From NCBI GenBank assembly GCA_019828565.1, contig JAHDYR010000032.1:62001-126000 (forward strand): a stretch of 64,000 nucleotides of DNA, in the 5' to 3' direction. The stretch comes from Carpediemonas membranifera BICM (taxonomy: Eukaryota > Protista > Fornicata). Shown one piece after another: positions 9,766 to 61,813 of the stretch (positions are counted from its first letter, which is position 1; every line of letters begins with the position of its first letter). The notes under the pieces are model-generated. The model made no database searches and was not told the DNA's origin. It worked only from the letters and a program-made list of their open reading frames with translations. The position numbers and the translations under genes are program-made.

Positions 9766-9876
9766 TGTCAGTCAGTACAATTTAAGAACATTTATGGATT
9801 GACTTCGACACCCCTGTGTCGAAGTCTTTTCCCCCAGTAAAACAGGTATAGTCAAACCACAGTAATATTACTTCAA

Positions 9877-12800
9877 ATGACTGAAAACGGCCCGTCAGTG
9901 AACGAGCCAAGCATTAGTGCCATTCTGGCATTTCACGAAAAGCTAACGAGACATGTTCAGGCCGGTGGAAAGCGCCGCCTCATTAAGCGCTTAGGCCCTG
10001 CAGTTCTAACATTCTGCAGTTCATCGGGTGTTGATGTTAAGCAGGTGTACCGCCGCGCGAGGAGACAGAAGACATCATCCTCCCTTATTTTTCGCGCACC
10101 GCAAGTCCGTATGAAAAAGTCCGGAGCGGAAGACCTAGCTTTCCAGGCCGTCGTTGACGCCATCAAACCTCAATCAGCTATCCTACAGCGCCAACTATTC
10201 CAGCTCTCTGTGAAGGGCGTCCATTCGGGGCGCTTCACACAGTACTTGGACAAGTTCCGTACAAGGTACCGCATCATCAAGCCTGATCTGGCGCCTGCTA
10301 CGATCCGCCAGATGTTCCTGAACGGAATCCTGGACGAGTTCCTCCGCGAGGAGGTCAAAGACGCCGTAGTAGGAATGTCGCTCGATGAGACCTTCATTAC
10401 CTCTCTTATGATCTGCAAGAAGCTCGAGGAAGCTCGTCTCATCTCTGAATCATACGCATCCCTCCATCCAGTGTCGTTAACACATCCTGGAAGCCGCGTC
10501 AAGTCTAGCAGAGCCCGTCCGGGCCGCCAAGAACGTCAACAGGCAAGACCTGACCAGCCTCCCCTCCAACGCCAAGCTCCTGAGCCACCGCACGCGTACA
10601 ACCACTCCAGTTTCCAGCCTGATACGAGACGGCCCGACAGAGCCAGTAAGCAGTGTCAGAACTGCGGCAAGCAAGGTCACTTCGCCCGGGACTGTAAGAG
10701 AGATAAGATCAAGTGCGCAAAGTGTGGAAAGCTGGGCCACATGGCCAAGTTCTGCCGGTCGACAGGCCCAGTTCCTGTAAACGACCGTAAGTACACCAAT
10801 TACTCGACAACGGCGCGCGTTTGGACTATGGCTGGCGAGACAACTCCATCATTGCCTGTGGTATCGGGTGCAGTGGACGGCTGCGCATGGGGACGCATAC
10901 TATTCGATTGTGGTGCGGACATCCCGCTCGTTAACCCCGCCTCAGCTCAGGAAGCGGGACTGAACGCGACGAAGCTAGCCAGCCCGATACACATCAAGTC
11001 ACCCGGAGGCAGAATCCAGACAGACACGACCTATGAGGTCCCAGTAATCATGGACAAGTCGCCGATGACCCCGAAGGGCGTCGAGGCGACGGTGACCGCG
11101 TATGCAGTTGAGATGGAGTATGACATGCTCTTGAACTATGCAGTCATGGTGGACTGGGGCATTCTTCCACATGTTGGAGCTAGGTCGAGCGACTCGTCGA
11201 TCGAAGAGGACGCCCAGCTCCCATCGACACTCGAGCGTCTTGAGAGACGACTCTACAATTTGCGAGCGGATATGAACGATAAGCAGAGTCGGATATTGGC
11301 CCGCTATGACCACTGTTTCCACGACCGGCAAGGTTTCAGCAATCTAGAACCATATGACCTTGTGCTCAAGTCGGACAGGGTGATCGCGTCACGGTCTAAC
11401 TACGTCCCATACCAGCGCGAGCACTTATTCGACCAACATCTCGCCGAGCTAATCGAGAAGAAGTACGTCGAGCAGTCTTTCAGCCCATATGCTTCGCCGG
11501 TGCTCCTGGTTCCGAAGGGTCCGGACAAGACACGCATGGTCGTAGATTTCCGTAAGATCAACGACGAGACGGAGCCGTTCGAGTACCCTATCCCGGAGAT
11601 ACAGACGTGTTTAGCGAAGTTAGGCGCATCCAAGGTGTTCGCCACCCTAGATTTATCGGCAGGGTACCACCAGATTCAGATGTCCGAACGTTCGCGCCAG
11701 TACACGGCGTTCAATACGCCGAGGGGCAAGTTCCAGTATACGGGCATGCCGTTTGGTTTGAAGAACGCGGGTGCTCACTTTCAGTACTCGATGGAGCGGG
11801 CGTTCGCAGATTTACTAGGAGCCAGTTGCCTGATTTATATCGATGACATCGTAGTCTTCGGAAGAACAGAGGCAGAGTATATCGTCAACCTGACGAAGCT
11901 CCTCAAGCGAGCGGATGAACTGAATCTTCGCCTCAATGCCGAGAAGTCACATTTCGGCCAGTCTACAGTCGAGTTCCTTGGCTGGACAGTTTCAGGTGAG
12001 GGCTACGGTATTGCTGCCGACCGGGTACATGACATCCAAGAGCTCAAGCTACCCAAGTCCCGAAAGGCGGCCCAGGCACTCATGGGATTTCTGAACTTCG
12101 TCCGTGACTTCGTGCCACACTTTTCCATGGTCACGCGACCATTGGCACTCGCAGCAGCCGGTAAGATTGGGCTAGGCACCCCAGAGCAGACCAAAGCCTT
12201 GGCCCTGGTGAAGGATCTACTGTGTTCCGCACCCATCTTACAACACTTCGACGTGACAAAGCGCCACGTGGTGATGACCGACGCGTCGGACGTAGGGATC
12301 GGAGGTGTCCTCCTGCAGGATGGCAAGCCTGTCAGTTATATGTCGAAGGCCTTCACCGATGTGCAGACAAGATGGAGCACGATAGAACAGGAGGCATATG
12401 CTATCGTCTCCGCGCTTCAACGCTGGCGCCGTTTCCTGGTCTGGACCCCTTTCACGCTGCTGACCGACCACCGTAATCTCATTTATATGGCCCGTTCATC
12501 AAACGCTAAGGTCCAAAGGTGGTATGAATCGATCGCAGACCTCCCCTTCACAATACGACACGTCCCTGGAGTAGATAATGGAGCAGCGGATGGATTGAGC
12601 AGAGTCTTTGCTGCGTCCAAGACCCCGACCGCGACAGAGAATGAGATCCATGACGCTCACCTCCACGGTCAAGCCCATCTCCCCATTTATACGACAGTCG
12701 AGCTGTTGAAGGCGAGAGGGAAGCGAGCCCCCATTGACCAAGTCGCAGAGGTAATTAACAAGTGCCCAGTCTGTCAGCTCACGGCGAAGCCAGAGGACGC

Positions 12801-13867: not shown

Positions 13868-13919
13868 GCCTACCACTTATACGTACCTGTAAAAAGGCAG
13901 GTAAGGCAGCCAACAGAAT

Positions 13920-16635: not shown

Positions 16636-16967
16636 TGTGCAGTGGGTCTTACCCAATGCTACATAGGAATACCATTACATAGATTATATAGTATTGACCA
16701 TATTGACCATATCATGGGTTTTCTTATTTAAACACTCTTTCCCAAGCCATAAGGCTACATTAGTACTAATCCCACCAACATGGTATACGGGAAGGCCAAA
16801 GCGCCGATACTAAAGGGCACGTCCGTGGCTGAATTAGTCACGTTCGTGGAAGCGCTCCAAGATTATCGAGCACTCGGCGGAAAACAGCGCTCAGACCGCC
16901 TAATAGACAGCTGTGTCCGTGACTACGTTGACGGAGTACTCGGCACGGACGACGACGATCCTCCCGT

Positions 16968-19900
16968 TGTTGTAACGATGCGCTAATTTATTTCGACACA
17001 CTGGTGTCGTCTCGGACCAAGTAGGACCAAGACGACACCCATAAAATATATAAATATTAATACGGTATTGCGACACTACCCCTCCCCCCCACCGAGAGTA
17101 TTAAAGCCACTTTGCAAATTGTGTCAGAAACCCATCCGATGGTCGAGATCTTCCTTCAGGGTGGAACCGGGTTCGACCCCCGGAGTCACCATATTTTTCA
17201 TTGAATGGGTCTTAACCTGCACGACCCAGCGATGAGTCGAAAAGAAGGAGGAGGCGAAGGACGGAAAAAAATGGAAAGGGTGTACTCGATATGCCCTTGC
17301 AGCGGCCTACCTCCACCTCCTGTCTGAGGTCTGAGTACCTCGTGTGGTGGCCGAAACACGAGTCGATGGCGAAAGAGTGAACGGGGAAGATGATCGCAAC
17401 GAGAGCTGAACCCGAGGGAAATGGGGAGATATATAAAGGTGATTGTACTGCTGTAGCACTAGGTTCTCACGGGCATTGGTTCCCCCGCAATGCGCAAAAA
17501 TTTGGAATCAATCGACTATCGATTAACTGGGGAGGTTTGGACCGAAATTCCCCGCAAAAGAGGTGTAACAAGCATGTGTAGAGCGATATTGGGCGGAATA
17601 ATTACTTCCTGGGGGGTAATTGAGCATAATTGGCTGCTCGCCGATTGAGTTGCCTAATACTGCGGCTAGGACCGGGCCCGCCACCTGCGACGAATACGAG
17701 CCAGAGTCGGCTCTAGTGCAGGGTTCTCGCGCAAATATTGGTCTAGGGCCTCCAGCTGGTCGGTGTCTCTGGTAAAACTAATCCAAGAGTCTTCGCTCGG
17801 CTCGTAGCCCAGCCAGTGGACTTTGAATTCGACCGTGGACCCCTTGTTTGAGACCCTGTGCTTGTAGACATTGTCGACCACGTACTCACCGCACTCGGCG
17901 GCAAGTCTAGCGATCAGGGCTTGCTCGTCCTCTGGCGTCTCGACAGGAATGAGTCGCTCATCGCTGACCAGGACCTCTGCCAGCGACACTAAGTCGCGAA
18001 CCACGTGCGTAGCGGGCGATTCGCCGGCTCGTACAACCTTCATCGGGCCCCCGGAGGCTGGTGAGCAGCTTGGGAGCTCTGCCAACGTAGCGGAGGAGTG
18101 CGAAGGAGCCATCCGGGAAGCTCGGAGGTGTGTCGCTGTCCTCGCCGCTCTTGTTTCGTTCGCTATACCGTTGGAGATGAGCCTTGGCTTGCAGACGGCG
18201 GGTATTAAGGGCGTCGCGGAACGCCTTCAGGCAATCGGCTTGGCCCGCCGACATTTCCTTAAATAGGGCCCACGCCCGCTCGTATTGCGCGACTGAAAAC
18301 TGCTCGGAGTCGGATCCCGAATTGCCTGTCACTAGGCGTAAGGGGGCTTGCCCCGTGGCCCGTGTTGGCCGTGTATTAATGATGTACTGCACTAAAGGGA
18401 GGAAAGGAACCCAGTCATAGTCCTGGCTGTCAAATAGTAAACCCCGCAACAGACGAAGGACTTTTCCATTCGTGCGTTCAACAATTCCGTTGGAGGCTGG
18501 GTGATGTGGGGTCGAGTAACGATGCTTGAGGGAGAGGATCCGGTTGACTTCAGCGTCCACTTGGTTCCTAAATTCCGGTCCGCCATCAGTTTGAAGTAGC
18601 GCTGGTTTCCCAAATAGGGCCCAGACTTCCAGCATTGCTTGGGCTGTCTCGGCGGCCGTGGTTGATCTCACCGGCTTCAGTACCACGTATTTCGTGAAGA
18701 CATCTGTGAAGACCAAGACGCCCTTGTACTCACCGCTAGCCCCCAGGGAGAGAGTGTCGACTTGGACGCATTCAAAGGGCGTGTACCGGTGTGTGCTGTT
18801 CTTCGCCGGGGGCGTTCGCTTGTGTGCGCGCAACTTCTGGCATGTCAAGCACTGCTTGACTACCCGCTTGGCGAGTGCCGAGACGTCGGGCCAAACATGA
18901 CCCGCCTCCATCGCAAGAGTCGTAAGGCGTACTGCCTTGGGGTGGCCATTGGCGCCCTCATGCAGATCTTGAAGTATGCGCAGCTTCTCCTCCTCCGATG
19001 GTACGATCTCGGCACTGTTCACAGTCTTAGTCGACGATTCTGGCCGTGAAAGAGCGTCGGCGACCACATTATGCTCGCCTGATATGTGGGCAATGTTGAA
19101 ATTGAATTCTTGCAAAGCAATCCGCCAGCGCATCACCTTGGGGGATACGAGGGAGCGGCGCATGAGGTACACAATATTTCGGTGGTCTGTGTGGATAGTG
19201 AGCGAGTTAACCATCTTGAGCAGAGGACTCAAGTCAGGCCGGGTGAGGGTATGAAGGATTGCGTACAGCTCCTTGTCGTAGGTGGCCCAGCGCCTCTGCG
19301 TCGCGTTAAATAATTTCGAAACGAAGGCGACCAGGCGGCGATTCGCGCCCTCTCCCTGGGTGATTACGGCCCCAAGCCCCCGGTCGCTTGCGTCAGTGTA
19401 AACGTCCCATGGCAGGCTGGGATCAGGCTGAGCCAGGACGGTCTCTTGGGCTACCGCCTCTCTCAGGGCCACGAGGGCTTCCTCTTGGCGTGGTCCCCAT
19501 ACGAATGGCTCACCGGCGTTCCTGATCAGCTCATAGAGGGGGTCCACAAGGTCCGCCGCGGCTGGGATGAAGTCGATCACGTAATTAAACATCCCTAAGA
19601 GTGTTCTGACCCCTGAAACATTGCTCGGAGCCTCTATCGACGTGAGTGCTTCAATCCGTCGCTTGTCGATGCTCTTCCCCTCGCGGGAAAGGTGGAAGCC
19701 CACGATGTCTAACTCCTCCGCGCCGATCACACATTTTGCCGGGCTAAGCCGAAGGTCATACTTTGTCAGCAACTGGAAGGTTTGCTCTAAGCGTGCTATA
19801 AGTTCCTCCTCAGATTGGGCGTAGATTAAGATGTCGTCAATATAGACCAGCACCCCCCGGTGGAGTACCGGGGCGAGGATGGATTGCATGGTACGCTGGA

Positions 19901-21898
19901 AATAACTCGGAGCGTTAGTCAGCCCGAATGGGACTCGGTTGAACTCCTCGTAGTCGTCAGGTGTTACAAACGCCGTCATAGCTCTGTCTTCCTCGTGGAG
20001 GGGCATCTGATGGTACCCGGACGTCAAGTCCAAGCTGGCGAAGAATTGAGCCCCCGCCGCCTCCTGTACGAAGGTTTTCAAGTCGGGAAGGGGAAAATGG
20101 TCACGAATGGTGAGAATGTTGAGCTTTGTGTAGTCCACACAGAGGCGTATGGCGCCGTTCTTCTTATCCACTACCACGATCGGGGAGGAGAACGGTCCGA
20201 CGCTGTTCCTGGTGATGCCAAGGTGGCGTAGGCGGGTTACTTCTTCCCGCACCTGAAGGCGTCGTTCCCCTGATAGTCTCCGGGCTCGTTCCTGGACCAG
20301 GGCGTCCGGGTCATTCAATCGGATCCGCATAGGTTCAACCTTGGCTCCTTGAGCCGGAATGGGGCCGAACAACGTGGAATACTCAGCAAGTAGCGCTCGT
20401 ACCTCGCTTCGGAGCGTGGCGCTCGTGGATTCGGGAATTTCAACAGCACCAACGTCCTCCGAGACGTCTAACTGGTTCAAACTCAGCGGAATGTCGTCCC
20501 CGTCCTCCTTGCTCAGATTTTCGGCTACGAGCTGGAGGAATAAGGAATCCTTCGTGAGAAGCCCGAGTACACGAAGAATGTCGGTGCCAATAAGGATTTT
20601 CTCGCGGTCCCCACTGAGGATTGCGAACTTCGCCTTAAACCGCGTTGGGGCTCCCGCCAGCGTGAGGTGTAACCAGGCCTCAGTATAGTGGTTAGTTGTC
20701 GAAATGGAACCGTTCGCCATTCTGAAGCGGAGGGTCGGGCCGGTCACTGTCTGTAGGCCAAGGGCCTCTGCTGACGCAGCGGAGATGATAGATTTTGGTG
20801 CTTTAGTGTCAATAATAAAGGAATACTCTTGGTCGTTTATACGACCAGACACTTTGAGTGGCTCATCGGGGTCCGTGTCCAGGAGATTAGCCTCGATTGG
20901 CTCCTTCTTCTTCGGGTTGGACCGGAGGCCGCCTCCTTCTTGGCGAGAGCGCATTGGGGCCCCATTGGGGCACTGATTATCCCAATGCCATCCGCCGCAC
21001 TTGCCACAGGCACGATGGGGAGGCTTCAAAGCTGGGTTGACGTCGTTCGGCTTGAGAGTGGAAGACTTCTCCGGGGCCCCTGAGGCAACTGCGCCCGGGA
21101 CCGGGAGGCGAGGCGGTTGGCCTCCTGCGGCCGTTCCTTTCTTTCGGGTGGAGCACTTTCCGGCCTGGTAGTGACCAAAGCGAATGGCCTTAGCCCGAGC
21201 GTCGTCATCTTCTTGAGCGAGGGCAATGCTCAGCTCGTATGCATCTGCAAGTGACTTCCTCTTAGGATGCTCCTTGAGTTCAAAGTCCAGGACCTTGCGG
21301 AAAGTGGATGGGCGGATCCCCTGAAGGAAGATCTTACGCGCGTTCTTCTCAAAGGGGGAAATGTCTTCTTCGTCCTCTTCTTGTTCCTCTTCGTCCTCGT
21401 CCGAGTCGGACTCTTCGATGTCTTCGGCCTTAGAGAAAACTGCTGAGAACGCGCTGACGTACGCGCGAATGGAGGTGATTCTTTTTTCAGATACCTGGCA
21501 GGTGACGGCCTCGAGCTCTTTGACAAGGGACAATTTGTCCACCGGAGCAAGGAACTTGCTGACGTATTCGTCAATCTTGTCGTCATTTGCCTTCGCCAGG
21601 TCTACGTTGAGAGTGTCCTCGATGATGTCCTGCAGGTCATTGGGGAGGAGGACAGCCAGCTTGGCGGCGGGATACAACGCCTTGATTCGGGCGGCATCCC
21701 TCTTAAATGAGCGCCAGGTTTCGCTAGTCAATGTCTCAACGCTCAGAGTCGGCAGAGAAATATTACCGAACATGTAGCCACTAGTGAATTCACTGTAACG
21801 ATGCGCTAATTTATTTCGACACACTGGTGTCGTCTCGGACCAAGTAGGACCAAGACGACACCCATAAAATATATAAATATTAATACGGTATTGCGACA
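16968..21898 (-). mobile_element. B: full-length chromovirus
   Basis: Identical 105-bp LTRs at 16971-17075 and 21794-21898. PPT 17076-17090. TSD CCGT, with 3 extra bases (TGT) at 16968-16970. Confidence 0.95.
17666..21773 (-). CDS. B Gag-Pol with chromodomain (frameshift ~18050)
   Basis: Starts MFGNISLP; CGKCGGWHWDNQC, IIDTKA, YIDD, TDASD, QTDGG, YVVDNV...FKVHWLGYEPSEDSW. Confidence 0.92.
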
Positions 21899-22544: not shown

Positions 22545-22566
22545 CCGTCTACCAGTTGAACCCCAC

Positions 22567-23709: not shown

Positions 23710-25174
23710 GGAAGTGCTGTGGGATGGCATACTTGTGTTTGTCTTTGAACTGGCGGTAAGGATCGCTTGTATGAGGCAATACTGTCGGCTTCTGCTTGCC
23801 AGGGGCTCGACGGCCACCCTCTTTCGGGTCGGCGGGCTGGGATGCTACCGCGAACGCCCGCCACGGGACAATAACGCGCTCGTCGTGATCAACGTCGAGG
23901 TTCTCGAGGCGAGAAAGAAGATCGTCAATTGACTCGGCCGGGTCCTCGATGACGTCCTTGTAAAGAGCCTCCGCGTCCTTGCTATAGCCTTTGAGGAATA
24001 GAGACGCGAGTAAGCGCTCGGTCGAGTTGTAGGTTAGTGCGTCAACGTCTGGGACGCATGGGTCGTAAGCGTTGAGGATTCTACGAAGCTTGAAGACGGC
24101 TAGTCGATGCTCCGCGGCTGGGCCGAAGAATCTAAGGCTGGATGCCTTGTCACGTACCATCTTCAGTCTCGAACCCATGTCGAGGGTCGGCAGGAGCGTA
24201 TAGACGATGTAGGGGGTAATTGCCTTTGCCTCTGCGCGGAGGTAAGCGTAAACGTCAGGGAAATCAGACCGCTTTGGCCAGGCGGCCGGGTCGGGCTTCT
24301 CCTCCTCGGCGGGCTCTGTGACCTTGTCGGAGAAGTCTGGGATTACCAGGTCGGTGCCGTCAGGCACGGGGACAGTCGGAGTTGCGGCGGTGAAGAGGTC
24401 GGACCACCTGTTGGCCGCGGGGTCATTCAGGTACGAGATGGCGAATTTCCTGGCCTTCTCAGTGGCCTCCGGAATGGCGCGTTGTATCTCTGCCGAGATC
24501 GCCTCCTTTGTCAGGCTAGTGCAACATGCAAGGGACTACCCAGCCTTACCAGCTGGACCCTGACGGTGATGGTGCTAACGCCCCCAACGTAGTATCAGGC
24601 TCGCTCACGAAGGGAAGTCAACACGCTAAGGCGTTCCCGGGGACATGGGGTGGTGCAAACTGGTAATTCCCTGATTTACACAGGTGTACAGGATACGTTA
24701 AATTTCTTTCTTTCTTTGTCAGGCTAGTGAGGGCCGGGTCCTTGTAGTTGGACGAGACCCGTACGCACTCTGAGAACTGCGCGCGCTTGCAGGCCGCCTC
24801 AAAGGCAGCAGCGAAACTCTTGGCGATTGCTTCTGGGGTGGAATTGTGGGTTATGGCGTGTGGTGCCTCGCTCGAGCGAGCCTGCATTCGTGCTTCGGTG
24901 TCGGACATTATTGTAGTCTGAAGGCTCTCGAGCGTTGGAAATCTGGCTGTCGGACGCCAATCGCGCTTCAGCCTTGCGATGACGTCCGCCGTGAAGGTTT
25001 GTACGAATGATGTAGGATTTCTTTCGTGAACGATTGCTGTCGTATAATCAGCGAGCGCCTCGATTGCGCTCTCCGGGTCAGATATCTGGAATTGCTTCAT
25101 CTTCTCCGGTAATATCGATATTGTACCGTGTATGGTTTAATGAAAGCAACGAACTTCCGCAGTTTAGGGTCACA
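23710..25174 (-). mobile_element. E: 5' fragment of LTR element (putative 53-bp 5' LTR 25122-25174; gag-like ORF 25100->~23710)
   Basis: ORFs 24618-25100 and 23528-24367 join in frame after removing the 192-bp insert. TGT...ACA unit followed by palindrome AATATCGATATT, 10 bp before the ATG. No second LTR to confirm the boundary. Confidence 0.6.
24522..24713. mobile_element. 192-bp retroposed insert (SINE or truncated LINE end)
   Basis: 16-bp direct repeats CTTTGTCAGGCTAGTG at 24506-24521 and 24714-24729; (TTTC)n run at the right end. Confidence 0.7.
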
Positions 25175-34808: not shown

Positions 34809-34881
34809 ATGTTATCCTATGTTTCAATGAGCTTTAGTTCGCCATAGCTGAACCCGTTGCTAGCTGACACAAAATGCACAT

Positions 34882-40350: not shown

Positions 40351-42004
40351 GAGTCTGTACTAGAATCGATTCTGTGGCGACAACAGTATTTACACATAAC
40401 CTGCGAAGCAGGGGTGAGTGTGCCCGTAGTTATAAATAGCAATAATAATAACTGAGGCACTGACACAAGGTGTCCGCGCGCTTTTCGACACCGGTGCAAC
40501 AGCCAACTTTATCAGTCGCGAGCTTTTGAAGCAGCTCAAACCAATTCTTACGCGACGCATTTCTCCCCGCAAGGTACAGTTCGGCAGTGGACAAATTGTG
40601 AACGTCACTGAAGAAGCCGTTCTAGAGCTCGACCTCGGGAGATGTGTTACTTCAGGACGCCAGCTCACGGCGTTGGCCCCTTGTCTGGTACTAGAACGAC
40701 TACCATATCCTGTTGTTCTGGGATACCCCCTACTTAACGAGCTAGGCGTTGTCAGGTTCGCTTTAGGCGAGCCAGATGACGTTTCCGATACCGACAGTGA
40801 GATAGACGTGGATCTCAACGTCGCAGTGACCGATGACCAGGTAGAACCCCAATGCCTGGTCCCCGAACTGACAGCGGAGATCGACGCGATCCGCAAACGA
40901 CTCCCAGATCTGTTTGGAGGTCTGACAGCCACGCCAGCACGCGTAACCCCGTTTGATATCGAACTGGAGGACGGTTCAACGACCAATTGTCCACCGTACC
41001 GATACTCAGACGCGGTACTCGAGGAGATCAGACGCCAAACGTCCGAGCAAGAGGAGTTGGGCATTATCCAACTCTCAGAGAGTCACTACAACAGTCCCAT
41101 AGTGGCAGTCACCAAACGGGACGGAACGATCAGGCTGTGTTTAGACTTTCGACGAGTCAACGACATCACTCGGCCCGACGACCACCCCCTACCGTTAATC
41201 GACGATCTCATCGGGACCCTAGAGGGCAAGCAGTTTTTCGCAGCCATTGACCTCTCCAAGGCCTTTCTTCAAATTCCGCTTACTCCTCGTGCCCGTGCAA
41301 TCACCGCGTTCGTCGCGGCAGGACGCAAGTACGAGTACCTGCGCATGCCATTCGGTTTGCGCAACGCCGCCATTCACTGCCAACGCTGCCTGGAAGAGGT
41401 ACTAGGGCCCTCTCTGTACATCCAAGCCCTTGTCTACATCGACGACGTCGTCGTCTTTGGTGAGGACAAGGAAAGCTTCTGCAGAACTTGTCGGACGTCC
41501 TTGAGCGGCTCGACGCCGCCGGCCTCCGCATCAACCCTAGAAAGACGATCCTTGCAGCCCGCAGCATCGATTACCTCGGCTGGCATGTTTCCGCCGAGGG
41601 CAAGTCCATCAGTGAAGACCGCTTGGACCCGATCCGCATTCTGAAGGCCCCAAGCAACGTCTCAGAGGCCCGGAGCTTGCTTGGCCTCGTCAACTATTTC
41701 AGGCCGATGATTCCGAGCTTCGCGGAAACGGCTGAGCCAATCCTTGCGCTCACGCGGTCTGGCGTCGCGTGGCGGTGGGACAGCACAACGAGGCTCTGGA
41801 GGCAATCAAAGCGACACTCCTGAGCGGCTCAGTGCTCGCTCACCCTCGCCCTGGTGAACCTCTCCACCTCTATACCGACGCCAGTGACATAGGCGTCGGC
41901 GCCGTACTCACGACAGGGACAGGCTCCGACATGAGGGTCGTGTCCTACTTCTCCAAGACACTGACCCCGGTCCAACGCCGCTGGTCGACTTATGACCAAG
42001 AAGG

Positions 42005-50567: not shown

Positions 50568-53500
50568 TGTGGTCAGTCCTGGACACAAGGGAACCAATAA
50601 AGACTTTAGAGAGAATACTGCCATATCCTGCACCAAATGTGCAGGATAATACCTGTTGTGACCTGAGTCACACCACACTGCCCCTCCAAGGGTCATCTTG
50701 ATAGAGATGAGCCTTGACAAAAGTATGTAAGGTGAGCTGTTGCGTCTGGTGACGCGACATGTGACGGAACCTTCGTTGCTCGATGTCATAATGTTTTGAG
50801 ATATCAAAAAGATATTCCGACACCACATGTGGACCGCACGGCCGACCGTTCGGCTCTAAGCTGTCCGATGTACTTGCTGCGATGAAGGAACTGATGTGGT
50901 GGCTGGGTTGTAGATGTTACTGCCCCTCCACGGTCGTCTAAGTGACGGCCGTAACACATGTAGGCAATGATTGGGAAGTTGCTGCGGCGGCGAAGAAACT
51001 GATCGAATCAGAAAGAGAAACCACCTGGTGAAGACTAAAAAAAACCCCGAAACCGGAAGAAAAAAGGTCATTGCTGAGTAAAATCTGAGCTGTCTGAAGC
51101 GCTCAAAGGGGTTTGGGAAGAGAACCACCCGGCGCTCACGTAAAGGTGAAGCCGGAGAAAGCCACACTAGTTCGATTTGTGGCGACAGATGACTGCGCTG
51201 TGCATGCGCAACATTTCGTGTCGGGCTCAAGGTCCAGACGAAGCGGCCAAACCTGTCGAAAGACTGGTCAGGCGCGTTTGTTCTGACGGCTCTATAATAG
51301 CCACGTATGGCATGACGCTGTACGTCTTTGAAAAGGGACTGTCTCTTGGGACGTATCCAACCACACTTAAGCAAAAGCTTAAGGTAGCAGGCTACTCTAT
51401 TACTGACACTCATCTATAGGACAACTCGGTCCTCGATGCAGGGTCTCATCGGTCAAGCCTCTAACCGTAAGCTTGGCCACCCCATCGCCTCCAACTGTGG
51501 TCTTGGGGCCGGTCTAACCCGTCCACCATTTGGACATATACCATTCAAACGACGGTACTGCTCCGAACACAACCGTTCTCCGGGATGACGTGTCGGACTG
51601 CGGGTTTCAACCCTGGCCCACTGACTCGTTGCGGCTCATGTTCCATCATAGTCTATCATAGACTGCCTGCCGTGTATTCAGGCTTATGAATGAGTCGGGC
51701 TTACCTATCGAACGATGGCCTAGGCTCACAACCATTCAAGACAACAGCACAGCGATGAGCACCCGACTGGGCTCAGCTCTAACTCGCTGGTGTGTAATCA
51801 TGACTAATCGCTGTCAGCGAGCGCCGTTAATCGGCCTGGCTCAGACCTGATAGCTTAATAGAAGAGTGTTGAACGACACTCGTGTGCTAGGAGCATACAT
51901 GCTCGCTCAGAACATGCTCCGTAACAACCGTACTTGCCACATGGCCTTTCCGGACGCTCAGGTGTGCAGAGCCCGTCGGCAAAGCATCCATTACCCGAAC
52001 CTTAGATGGCGGTCCCAAGGTGTCACACACAGCCGTGTTGTCGTCGGGCGTGCACTCCCTCAGACTCACCGCACCGTGGATCAACGCTCAGCTGACCACT
52101 ACCACCCGTCCACAGACCTACTGGTCTGGATCGCGATATATATCAAGTTGTTGGGATCCCTATGTAAGTAAGCGACACCCCTATACTGGCTAACTGCCAA
52201 GCCGGTGCAAAATAGAGATGTCGAACGACAGCTCAAAGGCTTGTAGACACTCATGTGCTATACAAAACCTACCTGGCCTCTGCGCCTACTCAGAGCATGC
52301 AAGATGCTCCGTTGTTCGACACAGCTCACTGGCCGTCTCCACCGAGGATTAACCTCCTGGTGAGACCGATTGGATGAACTACGAACGTAGTTTCGACGAG
52401 TTATAAATGTACATGTAACGTTAAAGCGCACCGGTGCTGACTGAACATGGGTAACCTACCTTCCGGTACAGGTTGGGTGTTAGGCTGAGTACGCTTGACT
52501 CAGGATACTATGAAGTGCTTCTTGCACTAGTAGATGACTGTCGGCACAGCTTATGTCACAAGCCTGGCTGACATTGCGAAGGCTTGACTGCTGTGACGGC
52601 TATTCGGCACTAGAACTGTCCGCTTCGAGATGAGCGACGACTCATTGGCCACTCGATCGTGTGTCGCATCACTACATGATGCTGTCAATTGACGGTAGCT
52701 GGACATTGCTCAGGCGGCTGGGGATGTCTCTCGTACTTGCGGGTGGACTCACTCGCTCGGCCGAGGCGGATGGTTAAACATCGGGTGTGTACTGCTTGGG
52801 CTAACCCTTGCTCGCGGGCACGGCTCCTACGTAGCATAAGTATACGCGGTTGATTAGGTCATCCGCTGATGACTGTCGACCTAGGCTGGCTGTCTAGTGT
52901 CCGGGACATGGGTAGCAGAGTGCTCGGGAGACAGACCTGTCTCAGGGGCATACGGAAACTCTGCAACGTTTGCTTAGTGTAAACGACGATACAATCCACG
53001 ATAAGTGGAGACTCTAGGAAGTGGGTGAACCACGGGTTGAGATGCATCGACACTACCCTCCATCTGGCTGAGTCTCTAGTTGCTGGCTGACCTGACGGGT
53101 CGCAAGTATTGTGCTAAACGCGCTTGGTTCGTCTCTCGCTGGCGCGAATGAGAGTCATTACGACCTCTCTCGAGTGTCCTGTGACACCGAGTAACATGCA
53201 AGGTTGATTGAAGAGGCTGTAGGGCACTGTCACCCCGACTGGGTGGTGCCTGAAGATCCCACAGATGTGAAAGGAAGGTTAAGTTCGTGAGGCAAGGCGC
53301 TGCCAAGCTCTTAGTTCCACTGCTAGTCAGCAGGCGTCGAAGGTGTATCCGCCCTCCTGTGGCGGAGACTTATGGGTAACCGGTGCGAACACGCACGGTG
53401 GGTGGACTTTTAGTCCTGGTGTTGGCCTCGTATGTCAGTACGAGAGGGCTTATCTGGCTTAGTGTTGATACTGCGGACGTCTTCGAGGGTGACTGCTGGG

Positions 53501-55468
53501 TCTACCGCTCGTCAAGAAGGTTATCAGCCTCCTCCATAGCTCTGTCTCCTAGTAGAGATATCATGTGGCGACGTGACGACATGAGTTAGATACGATATGA
53601 GTACTCTGCAGCATGACATGACGGATGATCTCCGGGTCTGCCCGAAGGTACCATTGATGACTAAGTGTTAGGGTGCCAGAGGCTGCTCGCCTCTATTGGC
53701 CTGAAGGTGTTGTACTGAGAGGATGGGCGCATCGCTGGAGGACGGGCCGACATGTGTTCGAGCTGCAACATGCTCGCGATACCCGTGAGTTGCTCGTCAC
53801 GGGATGAGGTGATAAAATACGACCATACTAGACTGGTCGTGGTTTCGGTACAAGTCTCACAGAGGAAGGGACCCGTGAAACTACTATCTAAACTCGTTGA
53901 AGAGCTGCTATGCGCGGTAACGCTGCCCCTCCGCGGCTCTGAAGTACTTTGTGTTGTCGCCGCGTTGTTGTCTGATGACTGTTGGTCTCGTGTCTACTAA
54001 ATTGACTTCAAGCAAGGATGCCGGTCATGATAAGTGGAAGCTAAGTAATTACCTTACCTGAGTTTGGCGGGTAGCACAGCTAGCCTTGACAAAAGTGCGA
54101 GCCATTGTTGCTCAAATGGAGATGCTCGCGCCATGGGGTGAACGATGGCAAGCGCGATACAGTTGACAGCAGATGGGGTGTCTGCCCAGGCTGTCGCGTA
54201 CTGAGGATGTGGATGAGCAGCGGTCGAGCTTATCGTTGCTCTATGACGCTGGTTGCCCCTGACAGGGAATTGCGGAGACGGTGGCGTGCTAGCTCTATTG
54301 GTTCATGCCGTGTTGCTGTACGTGGAAGGGACCTGCAAGCTGGCGAGTTCGCACATGTTCGGGGATAACTGGAGAGCAAACCTTGAAGCTGCTCAATACG
54401 GGTGCTGTTTCAGCACTGTGTGGATAGAAGGATATAACTGGCCGTCTAGGACCCACTGCTAGCAGTTACGTGCTCCACATGCTCTGCTGAGCATTTGTTA
54501 GGAAGGTATACATGGCCTCATGTAGACATATAAATAGTGTGGATCGCTCCCACGACTGTAGGAACCGAGCTTGGTGTCCCCAGATGGGTCGTTACCTCTT
54601 TCGGTTTTTCATCGTCGATGATGGTAGTTGCCTGTCTGGCTTGGGCCATTGGCCCTGTGCCACTCTTGCTCATGGTCTGCTGGATGACCCGAATGATGTA
54701 TGACTTGCTCTGGGCGCATGTGGCCAAGCTGCTACTCTCTAGGTAGCTCTGGATGATGGTTGGGGACGATGATTCTGGAGGTCTACGTTGGTCAAAGTCG
54801 TGCGTGGGTCTGTCAGTGAGTCTACTGGGGTCACTGCCCCTTCTTGGCTTCTTCTCGCACTGTCTCGGGGTGTTCGATTTGGCTGGAAGTGGAAGTGGCT
54901 GGCTCCTCGGCGTGGTTTCGGTTTGTTTTGCCTTTTGGCGGCTTTGGTGGTGCTTATTCCTGGTGCTATCTGCACTGTATCGGCTTGTGCTTGGCCTGGC
55001 CACTGGTCTCGTTGCTGGTCTCGGTCGATTGCCCTGAAGGAGCTTGATTGGCGCTCCAGAGCTGGTATTGCGGTGCTGTATCGTTTGTTGGAGCTTATTG
55101 AAGCTTGGTTACTGGTATTGGCCTGTTGTTTGCTTGTATGCTATAGTGCATTGGTGGAAGTTGATGGTCTTGTTGAACTAAACGCTCTAGACTTGTTGTT
55201 GCTTGCGAATTTCAGTTGAACTGTCGACACCGCGGAGACATTTGCATTGCGCTAACGGAAGAAATTGGTTCTGGTGAAAATGTCAATTGATGTTGCTTAT
55301 ATTGATTCTCCTGCGCCAGGACCGTTGAGCTCATCTCCTCCGGAAGAAATGATATCATTGTGGTCAGTCCTGGACACAAGGGAACCAATAAAGACTTTAG
55401 AGAGAATACTGCCATATCCTGCACCAAATGTGCAGGATAATACCTGTTGTGACCTGAGTCACACCACA
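50568..55468 (-). mobile_element. L: non-autonomous LTR element with decayed interior
   Basis: Identical 110-bp LTRs at 50568-50677 and 55359-55468; TSD CTTG; PPT GGAGGGGCAG. No ORF over 190 aa in the 4.7-kb interior. Confidence 0.92.
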
Positions 55469-57488: not shown

Positions 57489-60400
57489 TGAAGTCTGGAA
57501 ACAACAAGTGTGAAGTGTTTAAGGGGTATACCTCCTACTGGTGATAATGGCTCTAACTGCGTCTACATAATCATGTAAATACCACACTACCCCTCCTCCA
57601 TCAGAGCCATGCTTCTATTTCCGACTCTGACCGACTTTGCGCAAATGCTCGTCAACGCACTTTGCAAGTTGGCTATGGTCCTCCATGTACTTCAATAACA
57701 CGATGTTGGACCGCATGTCTTCGTCTGTTGCCACTCTCCAGGTGTCTTCGCTGGCTTCGAATCCCAGCCACCTGCACCTCACTTCCGGTGTCCTGTTGGC
57801 GTCTCTTCTAATCCTCCAGTCCACTATCTTCTTGATATACGCCTGGCTTCTATCTAAGGCGCATGCTACCTTGGCCTTCTCTTCGCTCCACTCTCCCTCG
57901 GCGACTTTCAGGTGAGAGACGTGCTTCTGATACGTCTTCTTCGTCTCTGGGTCTCGCACAACGTACGAGTTCGCCTTCCCGGGGACCTTCCTGACCACCA
58001 TCAACGGTCCGCGCCACTTGAGGTCGTACTTCTTGCGAATCTCCGCGTCGCGATCCACGAAGACCCAGTAACCCGCTGCCACGCGCGACTCAGGGTGCTG
58101 CCGCTGAATGTCAGCCGCTCGCTTCTGGCTGTCCTGCTTCTTCTTCGCCGCTGTCTGCTCCATATTCCTTCTTCTATTTTCTTCGTTCTGGATCATCCTG
58201 CGCGCAGCCTCCACCTCCTCCATCCTCTGTTCCTTGAGCTTGTCCACGGTCGCTCTGGTTCCATCCGCCACTACCAGTCTCCACGCCGACGACCCGGTCG
58301 CCCTCGAACGCGCCGAGTTGATGATGTTCTGGATCGACGGGAGCAGACCCTTCCATCTCCTGGTCTGCCGTTCATACATCTCGCACCGCAGGTGGCGGTT
58401 GACCTCTTTGTTCCACCGCTCGACCACGCCGTTCTCCTCGTGGTAGTACGGCGTCGTGTGGTTGACCCGCGCCCCGGTCTCCCTGGCCCACGCGTGAAAC
58501 TCGGTCGATGCGAACTGCGACCCGTTATCTGCTACCCACTCGACCGGCATCGGGAAGTGGGTGAGGTAGAACCTCTGCAATGCCTCGATGGTTTCTCGTG
58601 ACGACACCGTCTTCAGCGGGACCAGGGTGACCCATCGCGACGTTTCTTCCACAACTGTCAGGATGTTCCGGTACTCGCCGTCGGCCTCTTTCATGACGAT
58701 GGTGTCCACGAACACTCGACCATACGGTCCCAGCGGCTCGCGCGGCGCCGACTGGTACGGGTCGCCCCCCATACCCGACTTCTGGCACACGGGGCATCGT
58801 TTGACCATCGTTGACACGTCAGCTTCGGCTCCGTCCCAAGACAGTCCGATGTCCTCAAGCTTCCACAGGGTCTGTTGCACCCCATGGTGGCCCTTCCCAG
58901 CGCCGTGTACCTCCTTGAACCTCGCTTCCTTCTGACTCTCCGGCAGTGTCGGGCTCGCCTCCTGTGTCGTCCTGAACTCGTCTACTCTGAACAGCAGTTG
59001 CCCCTGCGGTCTCGGCTTGCTCTCTTCTGTCTCAGCGCCGGCTGCCGCTGGGCCATCCTCGTCTGACTCCGTCCGACTCTGGTCCGGAATGTCCTCCTGC
59101 TCCTGCTTCGCTTGCTCTCTGCGAGCGCCGCCCTCGATAGCCCGTCGGCGATCTCGTTAAGGCTGCCCGGCACGTGCTCCACGTCGAATTTGTAGTTGGC
59201 GAGCTCGAGTGCCCACCGCTGCACCATGTCGTCATTGGCGCCCCACACGTACGCGAGGTTCCTGTGGTCACACCACACCTTGAACTCCTGCGTTGCCAGC
59301 AGACGCCGAGCCTTGCGGATCGCGTGGACAATGGCGAATGCCTCCTTCCTATACGTGCTCCACCTGCGCTGCGAGCCGGACAGTGCCTTCGACAAGAACA
59401 TAATCGGCCGCTTGCCGCCCTCGTCCTCCTGCATCAGCACCGCGCCGACCCCCTTGTCCGACGCGTCCGTGTACAGCGCGAGTCTCTTCGCCGGGTCCGG
59501 GTGTGTCAGCACCGGCGCGCTCGTGACCGCCTTCTTCAATGCCTCGAGCGCCCTGTCCTGGTCCGGCCCCCACGGCGGCGCGTCCTTGAGCTCCATCCTC
59601 CTGATCGGCTCGGCCAGGTCCGCGTACGCCGGGATGAACTTCGCGAAGAAGTTGAAGATACCCAGGAGAGCCCTGACATCGCTGACGTTGTGCGCCGGGG
59701 CGAGCTTCTGTACACCCTCCACCCTCCACTCAGGCACGGACCGTCCCTCCTTCGACACAGTCCAGCCCAAGTACTCTACCTCGTCAAGGTTGAAAGCGCA
59801 CTTCTTCTCGTTAAGCTTGATCTTCCGCTCCCTCACCCGGTCCATGACATGCCGGAGGTTGGCCTCGTACTCCTCCACCGTCTCCCCGAACACCAGGATG
59901 TCGTCAACGTAGATGAGGCAGGCCGTCCCCAACATGTCCGCGAACGCCTCCTACAGCGCTGCCTGCATATGGCCCGCCGCCGTCGACAACCCGAACGGCA
60001 TCGTGTTATAGGTGAAGTGGCCGTCGGGTGTGGTGAACGCCAACAGCTCCTGCGTCCCCTCCTCGACCGGCACCTGGTGGAACGCGCTGCTCGCGTCCAA
60101 GGCTGCGAACTTGACCTTGCCCTCCAGCATCGTCATGATGTCGTCGATGGCCGGGAGGTCGTGCTGGGGATCCTCGATGAACTTGGTCAAGCGGATATAG
60201 TTGATACACGGGCGCCACTCCCCACCCTTCTTCTTCGCCATGACCACGCGCGACGACCAGGGCGACTTCGACCTACGGATGATCTTCGCCTCTTCCAGCT
60301 TCTTGAGGTGCTCCGACAGTGCCTGCTCAATCTCCGGCTGCCGCCTCCTCGGCAATTCGAAGTAGGGCACCGCATCATCACTCAGACTGATCTTGTACGG

Positions 60401-61813
60401 CTTCAGGTCTGCCGCGCCGTCGGCCGGGCCGAAGCAATCGGCATACTCCTCGCGGATCTGCTCGTCCATCGTGGCCAGCAACTCCTCATCGCCGTCGACG
60501 TCGGTCGTGGTGGCCTCCACGTTGATCAGGCCCAGCTCGGCAAGGGTCCTGAAGCAGATTGTGGGTTTGCAGCCAGCGATCACGTCCCAGTGGAGCGTGA
60601 CGTCGACGTCTTTCTTCAATGCGAGTCTGACCTTCTTCGATCCTCCCGTCAGCACTCTCGCCGTCGAGTTGTCGCCCAGCTTGACCCACCGGTCGGCCCA
60701 CTTCGTCCGGATGCCCCACTCTCTGGCCAACTCCGGCGGGATGAAATTGCTGCTAGCACAAGTATCGAGCCGCACCACATGCTCCTTCAGCCCGACACTC
60801 ATGCTGCACTCCCAAACCTTGCTTTCCACCCCCGAGGCAAAGACTAAACACTGATCGGGTTTACTGGCGTCCGGACAGTCCTTCGCGACGTGCCCCACCT
60901 TACCACACCGATAACAGCGACGGGTGCCTCCGGCTATCTTCGGCTCTGGGCAGTCCTTGGCCATGTGGCCCCCACCCCCGCAGTTATAGCAGTGCAACTT
61001 CTTCTGCCCCTGCTCTTGCTTCTGCACGTCTTTCTTCGATGTAGACGATGTGGGGGGCTCCAACAGCCCAAACTGCTTCATTGCCTCGCGCTTCTTCCTC
61101 TCCCACAGCATTACTGATTGCATGACTCCGGCTGAGTCAGTGCATGCGTCAACGACGCCCTGGAGTATTGCGTGTTGTCCTTCGTGCTTGCACGCCTCCA
61201 AGATCAGCCTCTTCGTTGCATCTATCGGGATGTCCTCTATCTTCTGGAACAACACCGCCGCTCTCGCTGAAATCCTGTTGAGCACTTCGCTTACGCTCTT
61301 CTCAGGTCCATTCGTCAAAAGCTTCGTCCGTGCGAACACTTCAGTGGGTAGGACGTGCTTTTCTATGCTCTTCTTCCAAAATGCGTCCTCCTTCTTCTGG
61401 TGTGCGCGTCGTGCCTTCTTGACGTCGTCTTGATGCTTCATGTACTGCTGAGTCGACACCGATCCGTTACCGTTCGTCGCACATGTCGGCTCCACGAACT
61501 CGTCGATCCTGGACTTCCCTGTCTCGCGTAAAACCTGTCTCTTCAACGCAGGCTTGACCAGGGAGTGAAAAGGCTTACGGTGCTTGCCGTCGTCTGCCTC
61601 CAGGCTGTACTCGTCGTAGATGTCTCGTACTCGCATATACTCTTCGATCGTGAGGTCCTTCATCGGTGGACCTATCGTTACGTCTTCTCCCATTGCGTCA
61701 AACCGTAGTAATTACTGAAGTCTGGAAACAACAAGTGTGAAGTGTTTAAGGGGTATACCTCCTACTGGTGATAATGGCTCTAACTGCGTCTACATAATCA
61801 TGTAAATACCACA
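57489..61813 (-). mobile_element. J: full-length chromovirus (gag-pol 61693->57615; stop at 59951, frameshift ~59050)
   Basis: Identical 98-bp LTRs at 57489-57586 and 61716-61813; 5-bp TSD TTCTG; PPT 57587-57599. Two CCHC knuckles, LDTCA, YVDD, TDASD, VADNG, VRCRWLGFEASEDTW. Confidence 0.95.

What the first reader, a model, noticed from the sequence alone, without database searches (positions are those of the whole stretch)
9861..61716. Palindromes replace the tRNA primer-binding site in 10 of 10 LTR retrotransposons: candidate new priming mechanism
Seen: every identifiable 5' LTR is followed not by TGG (tRNA PBS) but by a perfect palindrome that includes the LTR's terminal A. A 9861-9872 AGTAATATTACT; C 16759-16770 ATTAGTACTAAT; B 21783-21794 AGTGAATTCACT; E 25111-25122 AATATCGATATT; K 31520-31529 AGTGATCACT; F 33274-33285 CAGTAATTACTG; G 40362-40373 AGAATCGATTCT; H 42137-42152 CAGATGATATCATCTG; L 55348-55359 AATGATATCATT; J 61707-61716 AGTAATTACT. 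The sequences differ between families while symmetry and register are kept (covariation). 3' and solo LTRs lack the palindrome, and gag usually starts within ~12 nt of it. Established: gypsy elements prime minus-strand synthesis with tRNA or, in the Tf1/sushi group, with the cleaved 5' end of their own transcript. I see no copy of the complement inside these LTRs, so the Tf1 geometry does not fit. Inference: an RNA ending at the palindrome's 3' edge could fold back, or pair with the second packaged RNA, so that its 3' end sits on the LTR terminus, ready to extend into U5. That would be tRNA-independent snap-back or dimer priming; alternatively the site is a dimerisation signal.
Basis: partly seen in the sequence, partly recalled or inferred. 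Interest (0 to 1): 0.92.

Follow-up and report, generated by a model that had tools for sequence, protein, structure and literature searches.

The report
Self-complementary primer site in gypsy retrotransposons
A whole lineage of Ty3/gypsy retrotransposons, abundant in the free-living protist Carpediemonas membranifera and in environmental DNA, has a perfect 10-16 base palindrome exactly where the tRNA primer-binding site should be, which suggests they start reverse transcription by pairing two copies of their own RNA rather than by borrowing a host tRNA.

Summary
The window comes from Carpediemonas membranifera (metamonad) and is a nest of Ty3/gypsy elements with very short LTRs (83-141 nt). 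All six elements whose 5' LTR edge is fixed by an LTR pair carry a perfect palindrome of at least 10 nt starting on the LTR's terminal A; none of the six 3' LTR edges does (P about 3e-16). C, F and K are confirmed by gag homology. E is unverified. The same architecture occurs in two further C. membranifera families and in 12 elements from other assemblies and metagenomes. These elements group together on an RT tree, apart from relatives with an ordinary tRNA site. Close relatives differ by compensatory pair changes, and no palindrome has a mismatch. No Tf1-type complement exists in the LTRs. Monomer hairpins are unstable (0 to -3 kcal/mol), whereas homodimers are stable (-9 to -19). A non-autonomous element keeps the site. 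My best explanation is a self-complementary primer-binding site used in trans between two genomic RNAs; this is inferred, not shown. It is not entirely new: fungal GalEa copia elements were reported in 2017 with a palindrome that includes the LTR's final A, mechanism unknown. I rate it a new variant of a known kind.

The parts
9766..9861 (+). Element A, 5' LTR (96 nt, TGT..ACA), identical to the 3' LTR at 16122-16217
9861..9872 (+). Element A palindrome (12 nt). Its first base is the LTR's terminal A. The gag-pol ORF starts at 9877.
16759..16770 (+). Element C palindrome (12 nt). The gag ATG is at 16780. C is interrupted by B at 16971, and its RT fragment resumes at 22689-23735.
   Evidence: (gag matches L002, E=7e-7)
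16971..21898 (-). Element B, complete. 3' LTR 16971-17076, gag-pol ORF 17958-21773, 5' LTR 21794-21898.
21783..21794 (-). Element B palindrome (12 nt). Base 21794 is the terminal A of the 5' LTR. The gag ATG is at 21773.
   Evidence: the same palindrome is in B copy 2 (L082)
25111..25122 (-). Site E palindrome (12 nt), UNVERIFIED. No LTR partner and no gag homology. A short LTR of about 72 nt at 25122-25192 is possible. The 160-aa ORF after it is cut by another repeat at about 24719.
31520..31529 (+). Element K palindrome (10 nt), followed by the gag-protease ORF 31537-33195
33274..33285 (+). Element F palindrome (12 nt counting the C..G pair; 10 nt from the A). The gag ATG is at 33291. F is interrupted by G and by H, and its integrase-chromodomain part lies at 46951-48597.
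   Evidence: (gag matches L003, E=1e-22)
34189..40466 (-). Element G. 5' LTR 40373-40466 (94 nt). The 3' LTR is split into 35912-35945 and 34189-34254 by a DNA transposon. TSD is CTTG in G's orientation. It carries pol with a chromodomain.
40362..40373 (-). Element G palindrome (12 nt). Base 40373 is the terminal A of the 5' LTR. The gag ATG is at 40350.
   Evidence: the same palindrome is in G copy 2 (L083)
42005..46861 (+). Element H. LTRs 42005-42138 and 46728-46861, TSD AAGG.
42137..42152 (+). Element H palindrome (16 nt including the LTR's terminal CA). A second copy of its first 8 nt lies 21 nt downstream; H is the only element with such a copy.
50568..55468 (-). Element L. Identical LTRs (50568-50677 and 55359-55468), TSD CAAG, no recognisable gag or pol, so it is non-autonomous.
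55348..55359 (-). Element L palindrome (12 nt), kept in a non-coding element
57489..61813 (-). Element J. Identical 98-nt LTRs (57489-57586 and 61716-61813), TSD CAGAA.
61707..61716 (-). Element J palindrome (10 nt). Base 61716 is the terminal A of the 5' LTR. The gag ATG is at 61693.

Best explanation
The palindrome is the primer-binding site of these elements, and it is a self-complementary one.

Shown: it sits exactly where the minus-strand primer must anneal. Its first base is the last base of U5 in every element whose LTR edge is independently defined. It replaces the tRNA-type site in a whole clade of Ty3/gypsy elements.

Inferred mechanism:
1. The palindromes of two co-packaged genomic RNAs (or of a genomic RNA and a fragment of one) pair into a 10-16 bp RNA duplex.
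2. The element's RNase H nicks one strand at the 3' edge of the duplex, as Tf1's RNase H nicks an RNA duplex between bases 11 and 12.
3. The new 3'-OH then faces the partner's U5 end and is extended through U5 and R as minus-strand strong-stop DNA.
4. RNase H degrades the copied leader, which leaves only the short palindrome RNA as the primer remnant.
5. Plus-strand strong-stop DNA copies that remnant and regenerates the site.

A primer taken from the same site of a sister RNA can pair with that site only if the site is its own reverse complement. This explains why every family has a different sequence yet all are perfect palindromes. If the cut falls one base inside the 3' end of a 12-nt palindrome, the primer is 11 nt and the first base copied is the LTR's terminal A. 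The cDNA would then end in CA without further trimming. That detail is speculative.
For: Position: 6 of 6 LTR-pair-defined 5' edges in the window have the palindrome and 0 of 6 3' edges do, P about 3e-16. The same exact register holds in L003, L087, L088 and L083 element N2, each fixed by an LTR pair.

Generality: 23 elements carry it.
- Window.
- Other C. membranifera contigs.
- Other sources, L002-L005, L009 and L084-L091.
- 5 of 6 sampled distant gag relatives have it, P = 1.6e-11.

Clade: all ten palindrome elements then identified (six from the window plus L002-L004 and L009) lie on one side of a branch with SH-aLRT 98. All eight tRNA-site elements lie on the other side. In 13 control elements outside the clade, the junction palindrome is at most 6 nt and 9 have TGG.

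Selection on pairing: none of the palindromes has a mismatch. Close relatives differ by changes on both sides of a pair: A vs L009 one pair, B vs G four pairs, L002/L003/L004 one to two pairs.

Cis-acting role: the non-autonomous element L keeps the site.

Trans rather than cis: homodimer -9 to -19 kcal/mol against monomer hairpin 0 to -3. There is no downstream second copy except in H, and no Tf1-type complement in the LTR.

Activity: LTR pairs are 100% identical in A, B, L, J, N2 and L088, so recently mobile elements carry the site.

Precedent for an RT-associated RNase H cutting an RNA duplex to make a primer: Tf1 (PMC7175516).
Against: No RNA ends, primer-tagged strong-stop DNA or transposition data exist, so every step after 'it sits at the PBS position' is inference.

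If both packaged RNAs were cut after the palindrome, neither would keep a site for the minus strand to copy, so the model needs asymmetric or partial cleavage.

A palindromic site would also let plus-strand strong-stop DNAs pair with each other, which is a cost.

The duplexes are AT-rich and short (10-12 bp, as weak as -9 kcal/mol).

The overlap with the LTR's terminal A needs an extra assumption: either a cut one base inside the palindrome or one ribonucleotide left behind.

Host tRNAs could not be examined.

The fungal GalEa elements pair their palindrome with a downstream copy in cis, so a cis solution exists in nature.
Confidence: 0.45

Rival explanations
1. Dimerisation or packaging signal only. 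The palindrome links the two genomic RNAs, like retroviral dimer initiation sites, and priming is done by something else not yet recognised.
For: Perfect palindromes that form stable homodimers are what a dimer linkage site looks like. The site lies in the short leader next to gag. Donnart et al. raise the DIS comparison for GalEa.
Against: A dimer site need not sit in exact register with the LTR end, yet 10 of 10 LTR-pair-defined elements have it there. Only 2-56 nt separate the palindrome from the gag ATG, and no TGG or other shared motif lies in that stretch, so there is no room for a separate primer site adjacent to U5. By the logic of LTR formation, the base after U5 is where the primer's 3' end pairs.
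Confidence: 0.2
2. Snap-back priming in cis. An RNA cut at the palindrome's 3' edge folds on itself, or pairs with a nearby downstream copy as proposed for the fungal GalEa hairpin, and primes on its own U5.
For: In monomer folds the palindrome forms a small hairpin. H has an 8-nt second copy 21 nt downstream (P<0.002). The fungal elements have such a copy 12-41 bp downstream.
Against: Monomer hairpins have 0 to -3 kcal/mol, and most are predicted not to form. 12 of the 13 elements tested lack any second copy beyond chance. Pairing between the two halves of a perfect palindrome does not need the central bases to be symmetric, because they would form the loop, yet they are always symmetric.
Confidence: 0.12
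3. Host RNA primers. Each family uses a different host tRNA fragment or other small RNA that happens to match its site.
For: Internal tRNA fragments prime some copia-type elements (established knowledge). Host tRNAs could not be checked here.
Against: There are about 20 different sequences and all are perfect palindromes without a loop. tRNA hairpins have loops of 7 nt or more, so a 10-16 nt perfect palindrome is not expected in a tRNA. No site starts with TGG. The compensatory changes between close relatives point to self-pairing, not to tracking of a host RNA.
Confidence: 0.04
4. DNA-level or translational element. The site binds a dimeric protein, or acts as an initiator or translation signal for gag.
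For: It lies 2-56 nt upstream of the gag ATG and is AT-rich in a GC-rich genome, like metamonad initiator elements (my own knowledge).
Against: The sequence is not conserved and only the symmetry is, which fits base pairing rather than protein recognition. The non-autonomous element L, which has no gag, keeps it. The exact register with the LTR end is unexplained.
Confidence: 0.04

Closest known systems
Conserved Hairpin Site (CHSeq1/CHSeq2) of fungal GalEa Ty1/copia retrotransposons (Donnart et al. 2017, PMC5445492)
   Same: Both lack a tRNA-type site. In both, a short sequence directly after the 5' LTR is palindromic only when the LTR's final A is included (10 nt in GalEa). Neither has a Tf1-type complement in the LTR. 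The mechanism is unknown.
   Different: GalEa elements are copia-type and live in Pezizomycotina; these are Ty3/gypsy in a metamonad and in environmental DNA. GalEa has two nearly fixed sequences plus a conserved downstream partner, CHSeq2, that forms a hairpin. Here the sequences differ between families, the modal length is 12 nt, and 12 of the 13 elements tested have no downstream partner. The two could be cis and trans versions of one mechanism; that is inference.
Tf1/sushi self-priming
   Same: Both are tRNA-independent. The primer would be a piece of the element's own RNA, made by RNase H cutting an RNA duplex, and is about 11-12 nt long. Both occur in chromodomain-bearing gypsy elements.
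   Different: [quoted passage not shown] No such complement exists here, and the site is its own complement.
Retroviral dimer initiation sites (HIV-1 DIS, MLV palindromes) and Ty1 palindromes
   Same: Short self-complementary sequences in the 5' leader that pair two genomic RNAs (my own knowledge; DIS is discussed in PMC5445492).
   Different: Those sit in hairpin loops or elsewhere in the leader, in addition to a tRNA primer site. Here the palindrome is the only element between U5 and gag and is in fixed register with the LTR end.
Skipper (Dictyostelium) and SM-Tcn1 elements without a canonical site
   Same: Chromodomain gypsy elements that lack TGG and lack a Tf1 complement; novel priming is suspected (PMC5006619; PMC2864245).
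   Different: Those carry a polypyrimidine or T-rich tract, not a palindrome.

Membership tests
Ty3/gypsy (Metaviridae) LTR retrotransposon | Domain order protease - RT - RNase H - integrase in pol | tested here: met
   Pfam hits in that order in B and G, and partly in A and H. The best solved-structure match is Ty3 Gag-Pol, E=7e-66.
Ty3/gypsy (Metaviridae) LTR retrotransposon | Direct LTRs with TG..CA ends, a short target-site duplication, and a polypurine tract before the 3' LTR | tested here: met
   TSDs: H AAGG, L CAAG, J CAGAA, G CTTG, N2 AGCT. A has no clear TSD.
Chromovirus branch of Ty3/gypsy | Chromodomain at the integrase C-terminus | tested here: inconclusive
   Chromo hits fall below Pfam's cut-off in G (22.1 bits) and F (17.4 bits). 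Precomputed Chromo hits exist in relatives L084, L087, L089 and L092. No tree with reference chromoviruses was made.
tRNA-primed LTR element | Site complementary to a tRNA 3' end (TGG...) within a few bases of the 5' LTR | tested here: not met
   No TGG at any of the junctions. Control loci from the same scan show TGGTATCAGAGC. A match to internal tRNA fragments could not be tested, because no host tRNA genes are held.
Tf1/sushi self-primed elements | The site is complementary to a sequence inside the LTR (the 5' end of the transcript) | tested here: not met
   The longest complement and the duplex energy of LTR against site are no better than shuffles in all six elements (P 0.15-1.0).
GalEa-type Conserved Hairpin Site | Sequence after the 5' LTR that is palindromic when the LTR's final A is included | tested here: met
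   definition from PMC5445492
GalEa-type Conserved Hairpin Site | A second, inverse-complementary sequence (CHSeq2) 12-41 bp downstream that forms a hairpin | tested here: not met
   Only H has a second copy (8 nt at +21). The other 12 tested do not exceed shuffles.
GalEa-type Conserved Hairpin Site | The host element is a GalEa Ty1/copia element | tested here: not met
   The domain order and the Ty3 match show gypsy, not copia.
Retroviral-type dimer initiation site | Palindrome presented in a hairpin loop, in addition to a separate primer site | tested here: not met
   In the folds the palindrome pairs only with itself and is not in a loop. No separate primer site lies between U5 and gag.

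The most novel reading that the evidence does not exclude
Reverse transcription in this gypsy clade is primed in trans by the sister genome. The palindromes of two packaged RNAs pair, RNase H nicks at the duplex edge, and each RNA can prime on the other. Genome dimerisation and primer selection would then be one and the same event, needing no host RNA. The fungal GalEa hairpin would be the cis version of the same mechanism, reached independently in copia elements.
Probability: 0.4. Interest if true: 0.9.

Novelty: new variant of a known kind. Interest (0 to 1): 0.72.

Why it matters
Only two ways of priming LTR-element reverse transcription are experimentally established: host tRNA, and Tf1-type cis self-priming.

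Several lineages lack both kinds of site, and how they prime has been open for years. Examples are Skipper, Tcn-like elements and fungal GalEa.

This work defines a large natural series. The gag family has 454 cluster representatives. The 23 junctions examined carry about 20 different sequences, all with perfect symmetry in a fixed register. Recently active copies sit in a culturable organism that has a genome and RNA-seq data.

That makes the question directly testable, and it gives a clear prediction: rescue by complementary half-sites supplied in trans.

A tRNA-independent site would also make these elements immune to host defences that target the tRNA primer site with tRNA fragments (reviewed in PMC7472051, listed).

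LTR-annotation software that requires a tRNA site, or LTRs longer than 100 nt, would miss or misclassify these elements.

Tried and rejected
1. Overall palindrome excess. The window has 81 palindromes of at least 10 nt against about 67 expected, so counts alone prove nothing. I switched to a positional test.

2. LTR partners for C, E, K and F. None was found by sensitive blastn or local alignment. C, F and K were confirmed through gag instead. E could not be confirmed.

3. Tf1 geometry. Rejected.

4. A downstream CHSeq2-like copy. Absent except in H.

5. Rfam and tRNA scans of the window. Nothing found.

6. Host tRNA comparison. Not possible, because none of the fetched C. membranifera loci holds a tRNA gene.

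7. Transcript ends. I looked for Logan or RNA-seq-derived contigs of the window's elements through protein searches. Only annotated genomic copies turned up, so no RNA ends were obtained.

8. The full-length polyprotein search gave only relatives at about 31% identity with an unrelated gag. A clade-specific gag profile worked far better.

9. GTGGTACCAC after ...CACACA at 15826 and 27186 looked like two more cases. It lies in a 76%-similar non-coding repeat with no gag after it, and the palindrome does not include the A. I did not count it.

10. L040 was a false positive of my signature scan: a plant-type element with the palindrome in coding sequence.

11. L021 could not be resolved, and L092 has no palindrome.

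12. The organism behind assembly GCA_002919055.1 (L009, L084, L085) could not be named with the tools. It may be Carpediemonas frisia, but that is a guess.
Full report
SOURCE AND CONTEXT

The RING-finger ORF at 985-2436 is encoded exactly in NCBI assembly GCA_019828565.1, contig JAHDYR010000032.1. The deposit paper identifies that accession as Carpediemonas membranifera, a free-living metamonad (PMC8516963). A protein hit carries the species name. The paper does not mention retrotransposons.

The window has 57% G+C and no tRNA genes or Rfam families. From about 9.7 kb onward it is a nest of Ty3/gypsy elements inserted into one another:
- A (+)
- C (+), interrupted by B (-)
- K (+)
- F (+), interrupted by G (-) and by H (+)
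- L (-)
- J (-)
- the 3' part of one more element at the right edge

The LTRs are very short, 94-141 nt in the window. They have TGT..ACA ends and a G-rich polypurine tract 1-3 nt before the 3' LTR. TSDs of 4-5 bp are seen in G, H, L and J.

CHECKING THE OBSERVATION

All ten palindromes exist as stated. Perfect palindromes of at least 10 nt are common by chance in this window: 81 observed against about 67 expected, and 32 against 17 for 12 nt or more. Only their position can carry information.

For A, B, G, H, L and J, an LTR pair defines the inner edge of the 5' LTR independently. In all six a perfect palindrome of 10-16 nt begins on the LTR's terminal A (on the CA in H). None of the six outer edges of the 3' LTRs has one. 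Such a palindrome occurs at 0.26% of CA dinucleotides in the window, so six of six has P of about 3e-16.

C, F and K have no LTR partner in the window. Even so, the first ATG after each palindrome opens a protein that is homologous from its first residues to the gag of the other elements: C-L002 E=7e-7, F-L003 E=1e-22, G-K E=0.004. A gag profile finds A, B, C, F, G, J and K, and also H, which was not used to build it.

E has no partner and no gag match. Its upstream sequence could be a 72-nt LTR, but that is not proof. The score is therefore nine verified and one open.

The gag ATG follows the palindrome by 4-24 nt in all window elements.

BEYOND THE WINDOW

Second genomic copies of B (L082) and G (L083) keep their palindromes.

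L083 also holds two further C. membranifera families:
- One has an identical 83-nt LTR pair and TSD AGCT. Its terminal A is the first base of a 12-nt palindrome.
- The other is on the minus strand, with a 12-nt palindrome 2 nt before its ATG.

A scan of metagenome contigs with the window's polyproteins returned 80 loci. L002, L003 and L004, the three that match the query polyprotein over most of its length, all have a 12-nt palindrome after ...CAC and just before gag. In L003 an LTR pair fixes the edge. L009 and L005 are further cases.

In the same scan, eight plant- or fungus-type loci show the ordinary TGGTATCAGAGC site, or a near variant of it. Thirteen control junctions outside the clade have no palindrome longer than 6 nt.

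On an RT tree of 86 sequences, all ten palindrome elements then known lie on one side of a branch with SH-aLRT 98. All eight tRNA-site elements lie on the other side. This was a quick search, and some branches are long.

A gag profile found 454 cluster representatives in 1.84 billion proteins. I sampled six full-length ones down the ranking:
- Five have a perfect 12-nt palindrome anchored on CA within 60 nt upstream of gag (P = 1.6e-11 against the background rate).
- In L087 and L088, LTR pairs show the LTR ending exactly on the palindrome's first A.
- L092 has no palindrome and may have a TGG-type site. That would mark the edge of the trait, but it is unverified.

Three more loci from assembly GCA_002919055.1 and a Logan run share a 14-nt palindrome.

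In total, 23 elements carry the feature, and ten of them have the LTR edge fixed by an LTR pair.

PROPERTIES THAT BEAR ON MECHANISM

1. Symmetry is perfect in every case, while the sequence varies.
   - The outermost pair is always A-T. The second is G-C in 11 of the 15 palindromes tabulated, and the third is T-A in 13 of those 15. Inner pairs vary freely.
   - Close relatives differ by changes on both sides of a pair: A vs L009 (63% RT identity) one pair, B vs G four pairs, L002/L003/L004 one or two.
   - This is the signature of selection on base pairing.

2. The modal length counted from the A is 12 nt, with a range of 10-14.

3. No LTR holds a complement of the site beyond chance, so Tf1 geometry is excluded.

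4. Apart from H, there is no second copy downstream, so the fungal hairpin geometry is absent.

5. Homodimers are predicted at -9 to -19 kcal/mol and monomer hairpins at 0 to -3.

6. L has identical LTRs and a TSD but no gag or pol, and it keeps the site. This fits a cis-acting replication signal rather than a gag expression signal.

7. Many carriers have 100% identical LTRs, so they moved recently.

INTERPRETATION

By the logic of LTR formation, the 3' boundary of U5 is set by where the minus-strand primer's 3' end pairs. The palindrome therefore occupies the primer-binding position (inference from established retroviral reverse transcription).

The primer's 3' end must be complementary to the start of the palindrome. 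The only sequence in the element that meets this requirement is the end of the same palindrome. No single host RNA could serve about 20 different sites, and tRNAs are not expected to contain loop-free palindromes of this length.

I therefore favour priming by the palindrome of a second RNA copy. In this model the element's RNase H cuts at the 3' edge of the RNA duplex, as Tf1's RNase H cuts its RNA duplex between bases 11 and 12 (PMC7175516). RNase H removal of the copied leader would trim the primer to the palindrome remnant.

The overlap with the LTR's terminal A fits either of two details:
- a cut one base inside the palindrome, giving an 11-nt primer on a 12-nt site;
- or retention of one ribonucleotide, as known for HIV-1 (my own knowledge).

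None of these steps is shown. The model needs asymmetric or partial cleavage, because otherwise no template would keep the site.

The rivals are a pure dimerisation signal, cis snap-back, host RNA primers and a DNA-level site. They are weighed in their own sections.

COMPARISON WITH WHAT IS KNOWN

The closest precedent is the Conserved Hairpin Site of fungal GalEa copia elements. These have no tRNA site, a 9-bp sequence that is palindromic when the final A of the 5' LTR is included, no Tf1 complement, and an unknown mechanism (PMC5445492). One later paper cites it and also leaves the mechanism unresolved (PMC6934838).

The present elements share the palindrome and its register. They differ in superfamily, in host, in sequence diversity, and in lacking the downstream partner.

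Full-text searches for palindromic or self-complementary primer sites found nothing else. The library does not cover most subscription journals or Repbase notes, so an earlier mention cannot be excluded.

VERDICT

It is not wholly new.

I file it as a new variant of a known kind, the first for Ty3/gypsy and for a non-fungal host. It comes with a large comparative series that makes the mechanism testable.

To check the continuity of F's reading frame, I cut G and H out in memory only.

Noticed in passing
window 34255-35911 (- strand ORF 34885-35943): A 1.65-kb DNA transposon with 21-23 bp terminal inverted repeats and an apparent TA duplication sits inside the 3' LTR of element G. Its ORF has a DDE_3 transposase domain (E=8e-27) plus HTH domains, so it is Tc1/mariner-like. 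This is why G's LTR repeat first appeared to be only 66 nt.
   Followed up: yes
window 21794 and 16968-16971; L082 9975-9985: Element B shows a 3-nt heterogeneity exactly at the U5/palindrome junction. The window copy's 5' LTR ends ..TTACA before the palindrome. Its 3' LTR ends ..TTACAACA before the TSD, and a TSD can be found only if the extra ACA is counted as LTR. The 5' LTR of copy 2 also ends ..TTACAACA. This could be slippage at initiation or a later deletion.
   Followed up: partly
window 15440-15860 and 26880-27215: Two copies (76% identical) of a non-coding repeat of about 350-420 nt end in ..CACACA followed by the 10-nt palindrome GTGGTACCAC. The palindrome does not include the A and no gag follows. 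There is no Rfam match. They may be remnants of another short-LTR family or a different kind of repeat. The first copy lies inside element A, between pol and the 3' LTR.
   Followed up: partly
L082 12351-19271 and 19988-20181; window 24522-24719 (- strand): A 6.9-kb insertion with a 13-bp target duplication and no gypsy pol interrupts B copy 2. Read on the opposite strand, it begins with an A/G-rich run (AAAAGAAGAAAGAAATTT). A near-identical terminus (AGAAAGAAAGAAATTT) starts a second insertion in L082, and that second insertion is 100% identical over 198 nt to the repeat that cuts the ORF after site E in the window. It is probably a non-LTR retrotransposon or another mobile element family.
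   Followed up: partly
window LTRs of A (about 9801-9826), B, H and L: These LTRs contain a strong internal hairpin of 10-13 bp (leader fold z-scores -2.2 to -4.8 for A, B, H and L; not for G or J). Most LTRs carry an AGTAAA, AATAAA or TTAAA-like motif 19-35 nt before their end. AGTAAA resembles the Giardia polyadenylation signal (my own knowledge). If so, U5 is only about 5-20 nt long.
   Followed up: partly
window 50568-55468: Element L has identical LTRs, a TSD, a polypurine tract and the palindrome, but no detectable gag or pol and only short ORFs. It is a recently mobilised non-autonomous element that must use proteins supplied in trans.
   Followed up: partly
window 9764-16217: Element A has no matching target-site duplication and carries about 2.2 kb between the end of pol and its 3' LTR. 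That stretch includes a 444-aa ORF on the opposite strand (13920-15254) with no Pfam match. It may be a recombinant, or it may carry nested material.
   Followed up: no
L092 about 205-221: This is the one sampled gag relative without a palindrome. It has TGGTGTTCGTGCAACCC 45 nt upstream of its ATG, which looks like an ordinary tRNA primer site. If that is real, the gag family spans both priming types and the switch could be dated on a tree.
   Followed up: no
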